From the NCBI RefSeq assembly GCF_006345805.1, contig NW_021825484.1, forward strand, positions 1 through 15,108: a stretch of DNA of 15,108 bases, read 5' to 3'. Under the pieces are notes generated by a model. It made no database searches, had not been told where the DNA came from, and saw only the letters and a list, made by a program, of their open reading frames with translations. Positions 1 through 14,105 of the stretch are shown here, in pieces. Origin of the DNA: Octopus sinensis. Its lineage: Eukaryota. Position numbers and translations under genes: made by a program. The stretch's first letter is position 1. The number at the start of each line of letters is the position of its first letter.

Positions 1-102
1 ACTTTACCTTTCATCCTTTTGGGGTCGATAAATTAAGTACCAGTTGCATACTGGGGTCGATCTAATAGACTGGCCCGTTCCTCCTTGTGCCTAGAGTAGA
101 AA
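1..102 (+). mobile_element. SINE family A, 3' part (cut by window edge)
   Basis: ctttcatccttttggggtcgataaattaagtaccagttgcatactggggtcgat matches the body of the copies at 4816-5886 and ends in the cttgtgcct..agtagaaa tail. Confidence 0.85.
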
Positions 103-172
103 ATAATTTTTTTGCCAATAAAAAGACACATTCTAACCTAGATCCAAGCCTTCTTCATTGGAATTTCAACAT

Positions 173-3290: not shown

Positions 3291-3371
3291 ATGGAACGGA
3301 AGGAGTGTGCTCATGATGGGGATGAAGTCGGTGAAGTTGCTGATAGTAGGTCTCGGTAATGATGATATTGA

Positions 3372-3424
<53 letters not shown>

Positions 3425-3610
3425 ATCATCCTTTCTTCTATAGGCACAAGACATGAAATTTTAGGGGAGGTGTAATCGATTTCATTGACCCCAGTGCACG
3501 ACTGGTACTTATCTCACCGGACTTGTAAGTCAACCTTGGCGGAATCTGAACTCAAAGCATGGAGATCAGGAGGGGATACCATGAAGGAATTCAGCCCGAT
3601 GCACTAACGA
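3372..3610 (-). mobile_element. SINE family A, decayed copy with (ACT)n tail
   Basis: Reverse complement contains ataagtaccagtcgtgcactggggtcaatgaaatcgat...cttgtgcctatagaagaaaggat, running into the (TAG)n array at ~3372-3423. Confidence 0.75.
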
Positions 3611-3724: not shown

Positions 3725-3920
3725 GCCCTGATGCAGTGCCAGGCAGTGGCTCTCGTGGCTTCTCATCTTAACTGATTGTACATTGTTTTGTCTTGGTATA
3801 AATGATAGGCAACAGCAAATATTCTGCTCAATACCACAGATCTACTTGTCAGTTGTTTGACCATAACCAGTTGAGCATGTCCCTTAGTGGCTGACGATAT
3901 GTGCATCTCTGATCATGAGC
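3725..3920. mobile_element. Element B, truncated copy in the opposite orientation
   Basis: gccctgatgcag...catctctgatca abuts (AAT)n at ~3643-3722, has a 14-bp internal deletion relative to the 6411-6966 copy and stops at a (GATA)n array. Confidence 0.85.
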
Positions 3921-4815: not shown

Positions 4816-5036
4816 AAGGCGGTGAGCTGGCAGAAACGTTAGCACGCCGGGCGAAATGCTTAGCGGTATTTCGTCTGCCGTTACATTGTGAGTTCAAATT
4901 CCGCCGAGGTCGACTTTGCCTTTCATCCTTTCGGGGTCGATAAATTAAGTACCATTTACGCAATGGGGTCGATGTAATCGACTTAATCTGTGGCTCAAGT
5001 TTCAGGCGTTGTGCTTATAGCAGAAAGGATTGTTAT
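4816..5036 (+). mobile_element. SINE family A, near full length (tRNA-like Pol III head)
   Basis: Head ggcggtgagctggcagaaacgttagc, B-box-like gagttcaaattcc, conserved body and gaaaggatt tail; multiple copies in the window. Confidence 0.9.
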
Positions 5037-5040
5037 ACTG

Positions 5041-5205
5041 GCATCCGGGTGGTAGAATTGTTATCACGCCGGACAAAGATATTTACAGATCTTTATGCTA
5101 TGTGTTCAAATTCCGCTGAGGTTTACTTTGCGTTTCCTTGTTATTTAGATAAAATATATTTTAAGTTGACCACTAAGCATGATCGACTAGCCACAACGAG
5201 AAAGA

Positions 5206-5253
<48 letters not shown>
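5041..5253 (+). mobile_element. SINE family A, heavily decayed copy plus (ATT)16 tail
   Basis: ggtagaattgttatcacgccggac and tgttcaaattccgctgaggtttactttgc align with the family; (ATT)16 lies at 5206-5253. Confidence 0.65.
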
Positions 5254-5257
5254 GAAA

Positions 5258-5666
5258 AAGCGGCGAGCTGGCAGAAACGTTAGCACGCCGGGCGAAATGC
5301 GTAGCCGTATTTCGTCTGTCGTTACGTTTTGAGTTCAAATTCCGCAGAGGTCGACTTTGCCTTTCATCTTTTCGGGGTCGATAAATTAAGTACTAGTTAC
5401 ACACTGGGGTCGATGTAATCGACTTAATCCGTTTATCTGTCCTTGTTTGTCCTCTTTGTGTTTAGCCCCTTGTGGGTAGTAAAGAAATAGGTATTTCGTC
5501 TGTCTTTATGTTCTGAGTTCAAATTCCGCCGAGGTCGACTTTTCCTTTCTTCATTTCGGAGACGATAAATTAAGTACCAGTGAAACACTGGGATCGATGT
5601 AATCGACTAGTCCCCTCCCAGCAAATTTCAGGTCTTGTTCCTATATTAGAAAACATTATTATTATT
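5258..5666 (+). mobile_element. SINE family A, composite copy (head + body/tail 1 + body/tail 2)
   Basis: gtatttcgtctgtc occurs at 5307 and again at 5491; the body is repeated with two different 3' tails and ends in attattattatt. Confidence 0.85.
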
Positions 5667-5886
5667 AAGGTAGCGAGCTGGAAGAATCGTTAGCGCGTCG
5701 GACGAAATGCTTATCTGTATTTCGTCTGCCGCCAAGTTTTGAGTTCAAATTCCGCCGAAGTCGACTTTGTCATTCATCTTTTCGTGATCGATGAAATAAG
5801 TACCAGTTACGCACTGGGCTCGATGTAATCGATTACCCCCCCCCTTCCCACCAACATTTTCAAGGCTTTGTGCCAAGATAAGAAAT
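5667..5886 (+). mobile_element. SINE family A copy
   Basis: aaggtagcgagctggaagaatcgttagc...gagttcaaattccgccgaagtcgactttg...taagtaccagttacgcactggg. Confidence 0.88.
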
Positions 5887-6410: not shown

Positions 6411-6965
6411 GAGTGAGAGAGCAGTTCATGCCATCAAAGTGACACTGGGGTAAAATATACGAAGCCCAATATACCCATCATGACTACCCGTCTGATAAAG
6501 GTACACCAGGCACATGCATCACAACCATATGTGCGCGACATGGTGATCTCATATCAAGATAAACAGCACATGACCTTGCAGGTGGGGCCCAGTTAGAATT
6601 TTCTTCAGGTTGAGTAGCCCATCCCGCTCAAACGGTCCCTGAATAAGGGTTGTTTAAGGATGTTGAAAGAACCACCCATGTTTCCAGAGGTGAACTATTC
6701 AAACCCCAAAAGAAATCCCTCTCAACACATGGCTATGATGCTCCCCCACTACTTCTGCCAGTGATCAGAGATGTACATATCGTCAGCCACTAAGGGACAT
6801 GCTCAACTGGTTAAGGTCAAACAACTGACAAGCAAATCTGTGGTATTGAGCAGAATATTTGCTGTAGCCCATCTTGTATACCAAGACAAAACAATGTACA
6901 TGATAACACTTCCAATCAGTTAAGATCAGAAGCCATGAGAGCCACTGCCTGGTACTGCATCAGGG

Positions 6966-8434: not shown

Positions 8435-8817
8435 GGAAGCACTCCGTCGGTTGCGACGATGAGGGTTCCGGTTGATCCGAATCAACGGAACAGCCTGCTC
8501 GTGAAATTAACGTGTAAGTGGCTGAGCACTCCACAGACACGTGTACCCATAACGTAGTTCTCGGGGATATTCAGCGTGACACAGAGAGTGACAAGGCCGG
8601 CCCCTTGAAATACAGGTACAACAGAAACAGGAAGTAAGAGTGAGAGAAAGTTGTGGTGAAAGAGTACAGCAGGGATCACCACCACCCCCTGCCGGAGACT
8701 CGTGGAACTTTTAGGTGTTTTCGCTCAATAAACACTCACAACGCCCGGTCTGGGAATCGAAACTGCGATCCTATGACCGCGAGTCCACTGCCCTAACCAC
8801 TGGGCCATTGCGCCTCC
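8435..8817 (-). mobile_element. tRNA-derived SINE family C, tail type 1, full length with 14-bp TSD
   Basis: Head ggaggcgcaatggcccagtggttagggcag with A/B boxes; perfect TSD acatgcgcactatt at 8421-8434 and 8818-8831. Confidence 0.92.
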
Positions 8818-9385: not shown

Positions 9386-9672
9386 CAATGAAGACTCACG
9401 CCATTAGCCACAAAGAATAATCTCAAATTCGAGCCTACTATAAGCTACTAAGAATGCGTGTGTAGCAACTTGAAGATCCACCCACTACATGCGATAGACA
9501 GGCGGTTGCACGGGCGCGAAAGCTACGTTCTTATCCTCATTCCGTAAACGGTGGAGAGCTGAACCATCCTGGGGTACAGAGGATTCGCAATCTATAGTAG
9601 AGTCTGAAAGATTATCACACCATAGTGGGTTACACCATGGTTCCTCTGCTTTGTGGCAAAAGTAGGAAGACA

Positions 9673-9812
9673 GAGTGAGAGAAAGTTGTGGTGAAAGGGT
9701 ACAGCGGAATAAAAGAAAGAATATCTGTCTGGTTTAGCATCTGCAACTCCCGCCGGAGCCTCGTGGAGCTTAGATGTTTTGCTTAATAAACACTCAAAAT
9801 GTCCGGTCTGGG
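9673..9812 (-). mobile_element. SINE family C, decayed body lacking the tRNA head
   Basis: gagtgagagaaagttgtggtgaaagggtacagc and gccggagcctcgtggagctt...aataaacactca...ccggtctggg match 8640-8753, with a ~40-nt replaced segment. Confidence 0.8.
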
Positions 9813-10034
9813 CATAATATTCTCGTGTCACTGTCTTTATCCACAGCATCTTGGTATGAGTTTTCTACAATGCATTAGTATTCGTATCATTCTTTGTGTG
9901 GATTTGGAGATATTAGAGATATTGTTAGATCGTTAATGTTCAGGTTTTGTGTGCAGGTGACTGATTTCCCACGTTCAGCAATCGAATACGAAAATTTGAC
10001 TAAATTATATTTGCTATGTCAGCTGAAAATGTTG

Positions 10035-11444: not shown

Positions 11445-11549
11445 TTGGAATATTATTGATTTAAATTCGGTTAATCTAGAGTAAATAATGCCGAATATGG
11501 CATCAATGCTGTTCTAAAATTTATATGTAAGCATATAATTTGCTTAGAC
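11445..11549 (+). repeat. Short dispersed repeat, copy 1 (paralogue of 13256-13349)
   Basis: 11471-11549 versus 13272-13349 is about 91% identical by manual alignment. Confidence 0.85.
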
Positions 11550-11559
11550 TCGTACATAC

Positions 11560-11702
11560 AGGTGTGAGTGTACGTGTGTGTATGTGTTTGTGTGTTTGTG
11601 TGTGCGTGTGTGTTTGTAAGTATATATACATATATATAATACATACACACAAATATATACAAACATACATATATATACATAGAAACATATATATACATAC
11701 AT

Positions 11703-12205: not shown

Positions 12206-12975
12206 TGAATACAGACGTATGTACATAATAGATAATAGATAACAGATAAATGTATTTAGTCACTGTACCCATCTGTTTCCAATAACAACAAAGAAAGAAA
12301 ATGCTTTCATTAGCAGAAAACGAGACAGTGAAAAATCGAATAAAATTAACTTTGGAAAGTATTTGACACCAAAGATTATTATGACTAATGTTAACAAAAT
12401 GCTTCTGTTTACTAGTGTATAGAAATAGGAGAACGTATATAAATATACAAGGCGATTTCGTGAACACTTTCTAAGATATTCCTCGACATAAACATTTAGT
12501 AATCACACGCTCACATGTAATTATATGGGTGGGATATAGATGTTGTGTGCTAAGTGTTATGTTTCTTAAGTGACATTCTTGAAGACGCGAAACGAAATTG
12601 TGCAGAAATATACTTGCTTTTAAATAGGATATATTTAGTGTAAACGAACTCCCAAGAAATCCTTCCAGAAGAACACAGTTTACGACAGTGATAGACATGA
12701 GTCATATTAACAAACACCATTTCTGCTGAAGCCCCCCCCCCCAAAAAAAAAAGAAAAAGAAAAGAAATTGCTGCCTGGAAGATGTTTGTAAGCCATTCAA
12801 GAACACACAAAAACCGTTAGTTTCACTTCAGCATTTAAATTTCATTTGAGTCAAAATATGTTCGTCGCTTTGCAACCGCGAACTGTTCACTGACAGTCAG
12901 TAAAGAGGTCGCGGTTTCAAAGTGACAAAAATATTTCGACACAAATAATATTTAAGTATTTATTATTGGAATATT

Positions 12976-13251
12976 GGAGGCGCAATGGCGCAGTGGTTAG
13001 GGCAGCGGACTCGCGGTCGTAGGATCGCGGTTCGATTCCCAGACCGGGCGTTGTGAGTGTATATTGAGCGAAAATACCTAAAGCTCCACGAGGCTCCGGC
13101 AGGGGATGGTGGCGATCCCCGCTGTACTCTTTCGCCACAACTTTCTCTCACTCTTTCTTCTGTTGGCCTGCTCGCTTAGCCAGCGAAGCGCATTGTAACC
13201 AGCGATGTGTAGCACCATCTGATAGCCTGGTCGGTCACGGTGATCACGGAG
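12976..13251 (+). mobile_element. tRNA-derived SINE family C, tail type 2 (RTE-like tail), with 14-bp TSD
   Basis: A box tggcgcagtgg, B box ggttcgattcc; perfect TSD attattggaatatt at 12962-12975 and 13252-13265. Confidence 0.93.
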
Positions 13252-13255
13252 ATTA

Positions 13256-13349
13256 TTGGAATATTATTTACTTAATCTAGAGTAAATAATGACGAATATG
13301 GCCTCAATTCTCTCTAAAATTTACATGTAAGCATATAATTCGCTTAGAC
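13256..13349 (+). repeat. Short dispersed repeat, copy 2
   Basis: ttaatctagagtaaataatg...gtaagcatataatt.gcttagac is shared with 11471-11549. Confidence 0.85.
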
Positions 13350-13440
13350 ACATACATGTGCGCGTATGTGTATATATATATATGTATGTGTGAGTGTGTT
13401 TGTGTGTGCGCGTGTGTGTGTAGATTTAAATATATATAAA

Positions 13441-13765
13441 CTATTAAGGTGGCTACTTGCAATTTACAACCGAAAGGTGACAAGTATAGTCGTTACTAGC
13501 ATTGCTAGAAATAAGAGTCAAAACAACTCTTAGCCATGTGAGAGAACTTTTTAACGACTGACAAGGGAGACAAGCGAAATGGAGTCATATCAACGCTGAT
13601 TTCAGCTTTCATTAATGATCATTACTGACCCATTACCTCCTTTCTGTGGAAAAGCGTAGGCTCGAAACGTTAAAAACTTTTACACTTCCCGAGCGTTATA
13701 CTAATACATCTGTTTGTTGTCTACACCATCTGTCTTCGTCTTCTGTTTTTATTTTGTGAACTCTC

Positions 13766-13768
<3 letters not shown>
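13441..13768 (+). mobile_element. Probable Penelope-like terminal (pLTR) fragment
   Basis: Contains tttctgtggaaaagcgtaggctcgaaacgt, the CTG..GA-stem-CGAAACGT pattern typical of PLE ends; bounded by microsatellites. The left boundary is uncertain. Confidence 0.55.
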
Positions 13769-13800
<32 letters not shown>

Positions 13801-13803
<3 letters not shown>

Positions 13804-14012
13804 CTTGATCACCTTCACCGACCAGTCCGTCGGGCGTCCATTTGACACCGCTGGTTACAGTACACTGTCCACTCCTCTCTGGATCGTGCCTGTCTCATCC
13901 ACGTGATCCCAATCGTACTCCTGAAATCGTAACTCCACCGTCGTGGAGGCCTTCCGGGTGGTCGTTTCCGCTCGCGCGGGTACCACTCGACATCGACACG
14001 GGTCCGGTGAGA
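13801..14012 (-). mobile_element. RTE-clade LINE, 5'-truncated 3' end
   Basis: Minus-strand frame gives [41 protein letters not shown], typical of the RTE RT C-terminus (EWxPRxxKRxxGRPxxRWxDD...W...A..R..W); short 3' UTR followed by (AT)16 at 13769-13800. Confidence 0.88.
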
Positions 14013-14105
14013 TATACACACACCACACACACACACCACACACACACACAATACATATATAGTATATATATATATATATACACATATATATATACATATA
14101 TATAC

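What the first reader, a model, noticed from the sequence alone, without database searches (positions are those of the whole stretch)
13193..13860. SINE and its probable partner RTE LINE share a 3' terminus, about 550 bp apart
Seen: the SINE end (13193-13253, +) ttgtaaccagcgatgtgtagcaccatctgatagcctggtcggtcacggtgatcacggagat aligns to the RTE end (13860->13799, -) ctgtaaccagcggtgtcaaatggacgcccgacggactggtcggtgaaggtgatcaaggtgat. Manual alignment gives 43/62 matches overall and 23/27 in the terminal block, and the homology spans the RTE stop codon. Established: many SINEs borrow the 3' end of the LINE whose RT mobilises them, and cephalopod Ceph-SINEs share RTE tails. Inference: this SINE subfamily is driven by this RTE family or a relative. 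The clean 14-bp TSD suggests a fairly recent insertion.
Basis: partly seen in the sequence, partly recalled or inferred. Interest (0 to 1): 0.7.

Follow-up and report, generated by a model that had tools for sequence, protein, structure and literature searches.

The report
Octopus SINE carrying an RTE tail
A short parasitic repeat (SINE) in an octopus genome ends in 69 bases copied from the end of an RTE-type jumping gene, the usual way a SINE borrows the copying machinery of a LINE, so this is a sound but ordinary example of a known mechanism.

Summary
The last 69 nt of a 278-bp SINE (12976-13253, +) align end-to-end with the last 71 nt of a 5'-truncated LINE fragment (14015-13799, -). In the window this gives blastn E=1e-5, and 0 of 5000 shuffles reach the score.

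The LINE fragment encodes a C-terminus of the kind found in single-ORF endonuclease plus reverse-transcriptase proteins (RTE-like). Its stop codon lies 16 nt before the element's end, which abuts an (AT)n run.

I fetched about 264 kb of Octopus vulgaris, O. sinensis and O. bimaculoides DNA. It holds a second, independent copy of the same RTE 3' end. The SINE tail matches that copy 40/48 ungapped (z=15). It is closer to each RTE copy (69-73%) than the independent RTE copies are to each other (53-64%). Common descent of the SINE tail from this RTE family is therefore well supported.

The head and body of the SINE are repetitive, with at least 11 copies, but they carry at least three other tails. 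No second RTE-tailed copy was found. I could not tell whether this is a propagating subfamily or a one-off template-switch chimera.

It is not a Ceph-SINE by two published motifs. The 550-bp proximity to the RTE fragment is incidental. Verdict: a new member of a known kind, of low to moderate interest.

The parts
12964..12975 (+). Upstream copy of the target-site duplication, TATTGGAATATT (14 nt, ATTATTGGAATATT from 12962, if the shared AT is counted).
   Evidence: Exact direct repeat flanking the whole SINE including its RTE-like tail.
12976..13253 (+). SINE copy 'A', 278 nt: head, body, 14-nt linker and RTE-derived tail.
   Evidence: Positions 1-189 are 91.7% identical to a second copy at 8817-8626 and 74-93% identical to copies in octopus loci L004, L007-L010 and L012.
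12986..13039 (+). Pol III-type promoter in the head: A box TGGCGCAGTGG (12986-12996) and B box GGTTCGATTCC (13029-13039), starts 43 nt apart.
   Evidence: Read directly from the sequence. Both match the textbook consensus TRGCNNAGTGG / GGTTCGANNCC, quoted from my own knowledge. ARAGORN and Rfam do not call a tRNA here.
13051..13170 (+). SINE body shared with the B-type and C-type copies, up to ...CTCTCACTCTTTCTTCTGTTGGCCTG.
   Evidence: Multiple alignment of 9 copies; the tails diverge after this point.
13171..13184 (+). 14-nt linker CTCGCTTAGCCAGC of unknown origin, between the body and the RTE-derived tail.
   Evidence: It aligns neither to the other SINE tails nor to the RTE copies.
13185..13253 (+). 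RTE-derived 3' tail of the SINE, 69 nt.
   Evidence: The nhmmer profile hit covers 13185-13253. Identity is 69% to the window RTE, 73% to L009 and 64% to L004; 62/69 positions are matched by at least one RTE copy.
13254..13265 (+). Downstream copy of the target-site duplication, TATTGGAATATT.
13799..14015 (-). 5'-truncated 3' end of an RTE-like LINE, 217 nt. It encodes [66 protein letters not shown].
   Evidence: Translation. 71 protein representatives match at E<=1e-3, best 5.5e-10. Full-length hits of 839-974 aa match at their extreme C-terminus and carry Exo_endo_phos plus RVT_1. There is no other LINE piece in the window.
13799..13869 (-). Part of the RTE fragment homologous to the SINE tail: the last 18 codons, the stop (13817-13815) and a 16-nt 3' UTR.
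13770..13798 (.). (AT)n microsatellite directly abutting the RTE 3' end.
   Evidence: [quoted passage not shown]
8435..8817 (-). SINE copy 'B' (comparison): same head and body, a different ~185-nt tail, 14-nt TSD AATAGTGCGCATGT.
9666..9815 (-). Older, 5'-truncated copy of the same SINE body, followed by a fourth tail unrelated to the RTE.

Best explanation
The element at 12976-13253 is a composite SINE. It has a head with Pol III A and B boxes and a body shared with an abundant octopus SINE family. Its last 69 nt descend from the 3' end (last codons, stop codon, 16-nt 3' UTR) of an RTE-like LINE family that is also present in the genome. A truncated copy of that family happens to lie 545 bp away. 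Inferred mechanism: the SINE transcript, or a chimeric RNA/cDNA carrying this tail, presented the RTE 3' end to the RTE-encoded endonuclease/reverse transcriptase. That enzyme nicked the target at ...AT/TATTGG, primed reverse transcription on the tail (target-primed reverse transcription), and left a 12-14-nt target-site duplication and no poly(A). Shown here: the homology, its co-terminal position, the TSD enclosing the tail, and the RTE-like nature of the LINE fragment. Inferred: that the RTE enzyme did the insertion, and that RTE-tailed copies form a propagating subfamily (about even odds).
For: Co-terminal similarity in the window: E=1e-5, 0/5000 shuffles. An independent RTE 3' end lies in an MCCC2 intron of O. 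vulgaris (L004:15701-15773) with its O. bimaculoides orthologue (L009:12977-13049), found with a tail profile. Their orthology is confirmed by flanks that are 84.7% identical over 621 bp. The SINE tail against L009 is 40/48 ungapped, z=15, 0/3000 shuffles. The SINE tail is more similar to each RTE lineage (69%, 73%) than the independent RTE lineages are to each other (53-64%), and 62/69 tail positions are matched by at least one RTE copy. This is what is expected if all descend from one RTE consensus. The LINE peptide matches the C-termini of endonuclease plus RT single-ORF proteins, some encoded on ~3-kb contigs. The ORF ends 16 nt before the terminus and a microsatellite follows, as reported for the octopus element RTE-2_OV. 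The TSD encloses the tail. Other members of the same SINE family carry other tails, with 12-15-nt TSDs where I read them and, in most B- and C-type copies, microsatellite ends, so tail exchange is a habit of this family. Two hairpins in the tail are kept in all four sequences, with compensatory changes in the 3' one. Cells paired are 85.7% against 20-52% when the partners are slid.
Against: Only one RTE-tailed SINE copy was found in 15 kb plus 264 kb (about 210 kb non-redundant) of octopus DNA, and only two independent RTE tails, so no family consensus could be built. No full-length RTE with this tail was recovered, and the clade was assigned by architecture of relatives and C-terminal motif, not by phylogeny. 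The hairpin evidence rests on four sequences, two of them orthologous. Single-sequence folds are not better than shuffles (z -0.2 to -1.4). The head is not recognised as a tRNA by ARAGORN or Rfam.
Confidence: 0.75

Rival explanations
1. One-off chimera. During a single RTE retrotransposition event, the reverse transcriptase started on an RTE RNA 3' end and switched template to a SINE RNA after about 70-85 nt. This produced a unique SINE-body plus RTE-tail insertion that never became a source gene. The tail homology is real, but there is no 'SINE subfamily driven by RTE'.
For: No second RTE-tailed copy was found in 279 kb. Of 12 head/body copies seen, 8 have tail B, 2 (plus orthologues) tail C, 1 a fourth tail and 1 tail A. 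A 14-nt filler of unknown origin sits at the junction (13171-13184), as is often seen at template-switch junctions (my own knowledge).
Against: The sampling has little power: a family of 10,000 copies in a ~2.7-Gb genome would be expected less than once in the DNA sampled. The head and body of the A copy differ from every B-type copy at three CpG sites, one of them (TTCG) also kept by the C-type copies. Its source was therefore not the common B master but a separate lineage. The tail is 27-31% diverged from both RTE lineages, though this does not date the event.
Confidence: 0.3
2. Chance resemblance between two unrelated short sequences in AT-poor islands of a repeat-rich window.
For: Only about 70 nt at 69% identity in the window itself.
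Against: 0/5000 shuffles and E=1e-5. The alignment runs to the last base of both elements. An independent RTE copy from another locus matches the SINE tail at 83% over 48 nt, z=15.
Confidence: 0.01
3. Local exchange (gene conversion or ectopic recombination) between the two neighbouring elements created the similarity after insertion.
For: The two elements lie only 545 bp apart.
Against: They are in opposite orientation. The TSD lies outside the tail, so the tail arrived with the SINE. The 5' 48 nt of the SINE tail are closer to the L009 copy (40/48) than to the neighbouring copy.
Confidence: 0.02
4. The partner is not an RTE. The fragment belongs to another LINE clade that shares the ...KRxxGRPxxRW... 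C-terminal motif, and the SINE is mobilised by that clade.
For: Clade assignment rests on a 66-aa C-terminal peptide at 40-58% identity to relatives, and no phylogeny was done.
Against: The full-length relatives are 839-974-aa proteins with endonuclease plus RT and no further C-terminal domain. Three of them checked lie on 2.8-3.1-kb contigs. The very short 3' UTR, microsatellite end and absence of poly(A) also fit RTE. A BovB-like fragment in L003 shows the same motif family.
Confidence: 0.07

Closest known systems
RTE-mobilised SINEs that share the 3' end of an RTE-clade LINE: Bov-tA/Bov-B in ruminants, Sauria SINE/Bov-B in squamates, Au-like SINEs/plant RTE (Malik & Eickbush 1998 and Ohshima & Okada 2005, cited in PMC9115989; PMC6007223)
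   Same: Head with a Pol III promoter. A 3' tail homologous to and co-terminal with an RTE 3' end that includes the end of the ORF. No poly(A). A TSD of 12-14 nt. The partner LINE ends in a microsatellite. In this single case the TSD starts with T, 11-13 nt downstream of a TTT run, as in the published RTE insertion signature (flank).
   Different: Only one copy with this tail was seen. The shared segment is short (69 nt). The head is not recognisably a particular tRNA. The same head and body circulate mainly with other, non-RTE-like tails.
Modular 'jigsaw' SINEs of molluscs (PMC4758252) and SINE tail replacement (PMC5786205)
   Same: One head/body module is combined with several alternative tails (A, B, C and a fourth). 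Tail B is also carried by a CORE-like SINE with a different head.
   Different: Those studies cover gastropods, bivalves, squids and cuttlefish. The octopus family seen here is not described in the papers I could search.
Ceph-SINEs of squids and cuttlefish (Akasaki 2010, as discussed in PMC5786205)
   Same: A cephalopod host, and a historical link to RTE sequences.
   Different: Neither published Ceph-domain motif (CCTTGGGAAAG; CCTCCAGCTATGGGTTAAATAGT) occurs in the window, even allowing 1 and 3 mismatches. In Ceph-SINEs the RTE-derived part documented there is a 5'-UTR fragment in the body, not the tail.
Octopus RTE elements (RTE-2_OV, PMC9115989; RTE-BovB expansions in octopus, PMC8967140)
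   Same: A LINE with an RTE-type C-terminus whose ORF runs almost to the 3' end, followed by a microsatellite.
   Different: A BovB-like fragment in L003 clearly belongs to a different family from the one here.

Membership tests
LINE-dependent SINE with an RTE-derived tail | Internal Pol III promoter (A and B boxes) in the 5' head | tested here: met
   TGGCGCAGTGG at 12986-12996 and GGTTCGATTCC at 13029-13039, read. The consensus is quoted from my own knowledge.
LINE-dependent SINE with an RTE-derived tail | Head demonstrably derived from a tRNA (or 5S/7SL) | tested here: inconclusive
   ARAGORN finds no tRNA. Rfam gives no hit at the gathering score or at E<=1. Only the two promoter boxes and their spacing are tRNA-like.
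LINE-dependent SINE with an RTE-derived tail | 3' end homologous to and co-terminal with the 3' end of a LINE of the same genome | tested here: met
   69-73% identity to two independent RTE copies. The alignments with the window copy and with L004 run to the last base, and the profile hit on L009 also reaches the terminus.
LINE-dependent SINE with an RTE-derived tail | Target-site duplication enclosing the whole element; no poly(A) | tested here: met
   12-14-nt exact repeat. The element ends ...GGAGAT, like the RTE copies (...GGTGAT...CTGTGAT).
LINE-dependent SINE with an RTE-derived tail | Many dispersed copies of the same composite (a family, not a single insertion) | tested here: inconclusive
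   The head and body are repetitive: 3 copies in the window and 9 in 264 kb of octopus loci. The RTE-tailed form was seen once. The sample is too small to exclude thousands of copies.
LINE-dependent SINE with an RTE-derived tail | RTE-type insertion signature (TSD starts with T about 10 nt downstream of a T stretch; PMC6007223) | tested here: inconclusive
   The single case fits: the TSD TATTGG... starts with T, and TTT lies at -13 to -11. The flank is AT-rich and n=1.
LINE-dependent SINE with an RTE-derived tail | Mobilisation in trans by the RTE-encoded protein | not testable with these tools
   This needs a retrotransposition assay.
RTE-clade LINE (for the fragment 14015-13799) | Coding homology to the C-terminus of single-ORF endonuclease plus RT proteins | tested here: met
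   71 hits, best E=5.5e-10. P0009, P0036, P0059 and P0060 match at their last ~60 residues and have Exo_endo_phos plus RVT_1.
RTE-clade LINE (for the fragment 14015-13799) | Very short 3' UTR, no poly(A), microsatellite-like end | tested here: met
   Stop at 13817-13815, a 16-nt UTR, then (AT)n at 13770-13798. The same is reported for RTE-2_OV.
RTE-clade LINE (for the fragment 14015-13799) | Endonuclease and RT domains in this element; placement of its RT in the RTE clade by phylogeny | not tested
   The copy is 5'-truncated to 217 nt. No full-length copy of this family was recovered.
Ceph-SINE superfamily | Ceph-domain in the body (motifs CCTTGGGAAAG and CCTCCAGCTATGGGTTAAATAGT, as printed in PMC5786205) | tested here: not met
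   0 matches in the window with up to 1 and 3 mismatches respectively.

The most novel reading that the evidence does not exclude
The octopus-specific SINE expansion may be driven by one Pol III head/body module that repeatedly swaps its 3' tail among different LINE partners (at least four tails seen here). On this reading the RTE-tailed copy is a young or nascent lineage caught close to its birth. Its 69-nt tail would then contain the minimal RTE recognition element: a 5-7-bp terminal hairpin, kept by compensatory changes, followed by ...GTGAT.
Probability: 0.25. Interest if true: 0.5.

Novelty: new member of a known kind. Interest (0 to 1): 0.3.

Why it matters
SINEs make up roughly a tenth of octopus genomes and RTE elements are expanded there (PMC13282606, PMC8967140). 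RTE-2_OV has been proposed to be active in the brain (PMC9115989). The papers I could search do not say which LINE moves which octopus SINE. A documented SINE-RTE tail match gives a concrete, testable partner assignment for at least one lineage. It also points to a short candidate recognition element of 69 nt with two hairpins. In kind it is textbook biology: LINE-tail borrowing and SINE tail replacement.

Tried and rejected
- **Protein word-index searches.** Searches with the 66-aa LINE peptide and with a SINE reading frame found no candidates.
- **Exact DNA scans.** Scans of metagenome, viral and prokaryote genome collections for a SINE body 20-mer and an RTE-tail pattern gave one chance hit and otherwise nothing.
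- **Look-up of a window ORF** in the gene index: not on record.
- **P0010**, the most similar protein hit, has an unrelated 3' UTR and is a different family.
- **O. vulgaris transcriptome supplement.** Text search of the first 400 kb found no k-mer of the SINE body or tail; a control k-mer was found.
- **Two long genes** (ERR, HHAT) returned no DNA because their ranges exceed 100 kb.
- **Fourth tail at 9666 downwards.** I tested whether it is a diverged RTE tail. It is not: scores are within the shuffle range.
- **Paralogous segment 11471-11639 as an empty site.** It shares a single TTGGAATATTATT, but BLAST homology starts only 18 nt downstream of the SINE end, so I count it as weak support only.
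- **Ceph-SINE membership:** rejected.
- **tRNA identity of the head:** not supported by ARAGORN or Rfam.
- **Fold stability.** Single-sequence folds of the tail are not more stable than shuffles.

Full report
**What is in the window.** The window is AT-rich, microsatellite-rich eukaryotic DNA with no tRNA or Rfam family at gathering score. A second SINE family in it (4816-5885 and elsewhere) matches an Octopus vulgaris chromosome at 88-95%. The window therefore comes from an Octopus-genus genome or a close relative.

**The SINE.** The element of the finding spans 12976-13253 (+), 278 nt.
- Its head has a perfect A box (12986-12996) and B box (13029-13039). ARAGORN and Rfam do not recognise the head as a tRNA.
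- It is flanked by the exact repeat ATTATTGGAATATT.
- Its terminal ...GAT is shared with the RTE copies, so the duplication proper is probably 12 nt plus 2 nt of microhomology.

**The LINE fragment.** On the minus strand, 14015-13799 is a 217-nt fragment.
- Its reading frame ends ...[57 protein letters not shown]. The stop is at 13817-13815, followed by 16 nt of UTR and then (AT)n.
- An exhaustive HMMER scan of 1.8 billion representatives gave 71 hits (best E=5.5e-10).
- The full-length hits (839-974 aa) match at their very C-terminus and have endonuclease plus reverse-transcriptase domains. Three that I checked lie on contigs of about 3 kb. This is the RTE architecture.
- The octopus element RTE-2_OV is described with a microsatellite beginning at the ORF end.
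- No other LINE piece is in the window. Clade placement by phylogeny was not possible.

**The observation.** SINE 13185-13253 aligns with LINE 13869-13799 at 49/71, to the last base of both elements.
- blastn E=1e-5 in the window.
- No dinucleotide shuffle out of 5000 reaches the local score or the forced co-terminal score.

**Independent evidence from other octopus DNA.** No tool gave direct access to a cephalopod genome, so I obtained octopus DNA indirectly.
- ORFs translated from O. vulgaris transcripts printed in a supplement of PMC9115989 were found exactly in the protein collection.
- Their genomic loci were then fetched: L003-L012, 264 kb from O. vulgaris, O. sinensis and O. bimaculoides, about 210 kb non-redundant.

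A tblastn hit and then a tail profile found a second copy of the same RTE 3' end in an intron of the MCCC2 gene: L004:15701-15773 in O. vulgaris and L009:12977-13049 in O. bimaculoides. The flanks are orthologous (84.7% over 621 bp), so that insertion predates the split of the two species.

The SINE tail matches the L009 copy 40/48 without gaps (z=15, 0/3000 shuffles). Pairwise identities over the tail:

| Pair | Identity |
|---|---|
| SINE - window RTE | 69% |
| SINE - L009 | 73% |
| SINE - L004 | 64% |
| window RTE - L009 | 64% |
| window RTE - L004 | 53% |

Of the 69 SINE tail positions, 62 are matched by at least one RTE copy. The SINE tail therefore sits between the decayed RTE copies, as expected if all descend from one RTE 3' end. 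Its 5' half resembles the distant copy more than the neighbouring one. This rules out local exchange and shows that the 545-bp proximity is incidental.

**Anatomy of the SINE family.** The head and body (to about position 195) recur with other tails.

| Type | Where seen | Tail |
|---|---|---|
| B | 8 copies including window 8817-8435 | ~185 nt, most copies ending in (CAA)n-like repeats; also carried by a CORE-like SINE with a different head |
| C | L007/L008 | ends in (CAAA)n |
| fourth tail | window 9666-9815 | not RTE-like |
| A | window 12976-13253 only | RTE-derived, 69 nt |

In copy A the body is followed by a 14-nt linker of unknown origin (13171-13184) and then the RTE tail. Copy A keeps CpG at three sites where every B copy has CA or TG, and the C-type copies also keep one of them (TTCG). 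Its source was therefore not the common B master. No second A-type copy was found. With this little DNA, that does not separate a family of thousands of copies from a single chimeric insertion.

**Mechanism.** I consider the following most likely (0.75). The RTE-encoded enzyme recognised the RTE-type 3' end on the SINE RNA, or on a chimeric template, and inserted it by target-primed reverse transcription. Whether A-type copies propagate is about even odds; the main rival is a one-off template-switch chimera (0.3).

A possible recognition element is suggested by two hairpins retained in all four tails. The 3' one is a 5-7-bp stem just upstream of ...GTGAT and shows compensatory changes between RTE lineages. 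Cells paired are 85.7%, against 20-52% for slid controls. With four sequences, and single folds no better than shuffles, this is only a lead.

**Comparison with what is known.** This is the classic RTE-SINE relationship: Bov-tA/Bov-B, Sauria SINE, Au-like SINEs (PMC6007223). It is combined with the modular tail-swapping described for mollusc SINEs (PMC4758252) and for tail replacement generally (PMC5786205).

It is not a Ceph-SINE by the two motifs printed in PMC5786205. That paper links Ceph-SINE bodies to RTE 5' UTRs rather than showing shared tails.

Octopus repeat papers class octopus SINEs as tRNA-Core, tRNA-Deu or unclassified, and report RTE expansion. In the text I could search they name no LINE partner.

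**Verdict.** It is a new member of a known kind, interest about 0.3.

Noticed in passing
window 1-103, 460-624, 3357-3609, 4816-5885: Copies of a second SINE family (B-box-like GAGTTCAAATTCCGC; body ...GGGGTCGATAAATTAAGTACCAG..., which from memory resembles the Deu domain). Four lie nearly head to tail at 4816-5842. They are 88-95% identical to copies in O. vulgaris locus L003.
   Followed up: partly
window 8435-8817 (-); L004:6504-6867; L009:8453-8836 and 26999-27360; L010:17578-17953; L012:15670-16026 and 1222-1536: B-type copies of the same SINE: identical head and body but a ~185-nt different tail, in most copies ending ...GACGGAGTGCC plus (CAA)n. Where I read the flanks there is a TSD of 12-14 nt. 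They are the majority form in the DNA sampled.
   Followed up: partly
L004:27560-27865, L004:6890-7112, L004:36800-37023, L009:23200-23414: The B tail is also carried by a SINE with a different head and a CORE-like body (GTGTCCTTGAGCAAGACTCTTTATTTCA). Tails are thus shared across octopus SINE families.
   Followed up: partly
window 9666-9815 (-): An older, 5'-truncated copy of the same SINE body, with a 26-nt insertion and a fourth tail that shows no similarity to the RTE tail.
   Followed up: yes
window 11471-11639 vs 13272-13439: A duplicated 168-bp segment (80% identity) starts 18 nt downstream of the SINE end. The paralogue has a single TTGGAATATTATT where the SINE locus has the TSD pair. 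It may be an empty-site witness, but the evidence is weak.
   Followed up: partly
window 3777-3915 and 6762-6900: A 139-nt inverted pair, 94% complementary and 2.8 kb apart. These are probably two copies of another repeat in opposite orientation.
   Followed up: no
L004:15633-15773 and L009:12900-13049: The second RTE 3' fragment lies only about 35-60 nt downstream of a 5' splice site of the MCCC2 gene in both O. vulgaris and O. bimaculoides. L009 has an extra tandem ACTGTGGT unit at the RTE end.
   Followed up: partly
L003:23398-23622: A BovB-like LINE C-terminus (AYFGHVMRRKSLEKDIMLGMVSGKRGRGRPRTRWLDTIK...) near the O. vulgaris rhodopsin gene. It is a different RTE-clade family from the one in the window.
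   Followed up: no
window 13185-13253; 13799-13869 (-); L004:15701-15773; L009:12977-13049: Two hairpins are conserved in the shared tail: GCAUUGU-AACCA-GCGAUGU, and a terminal 5-7-bp stem with GC/GU to AU/UA compensatory changes. This may be a reverse-transcriptase recognition element.
   Followed up: partly
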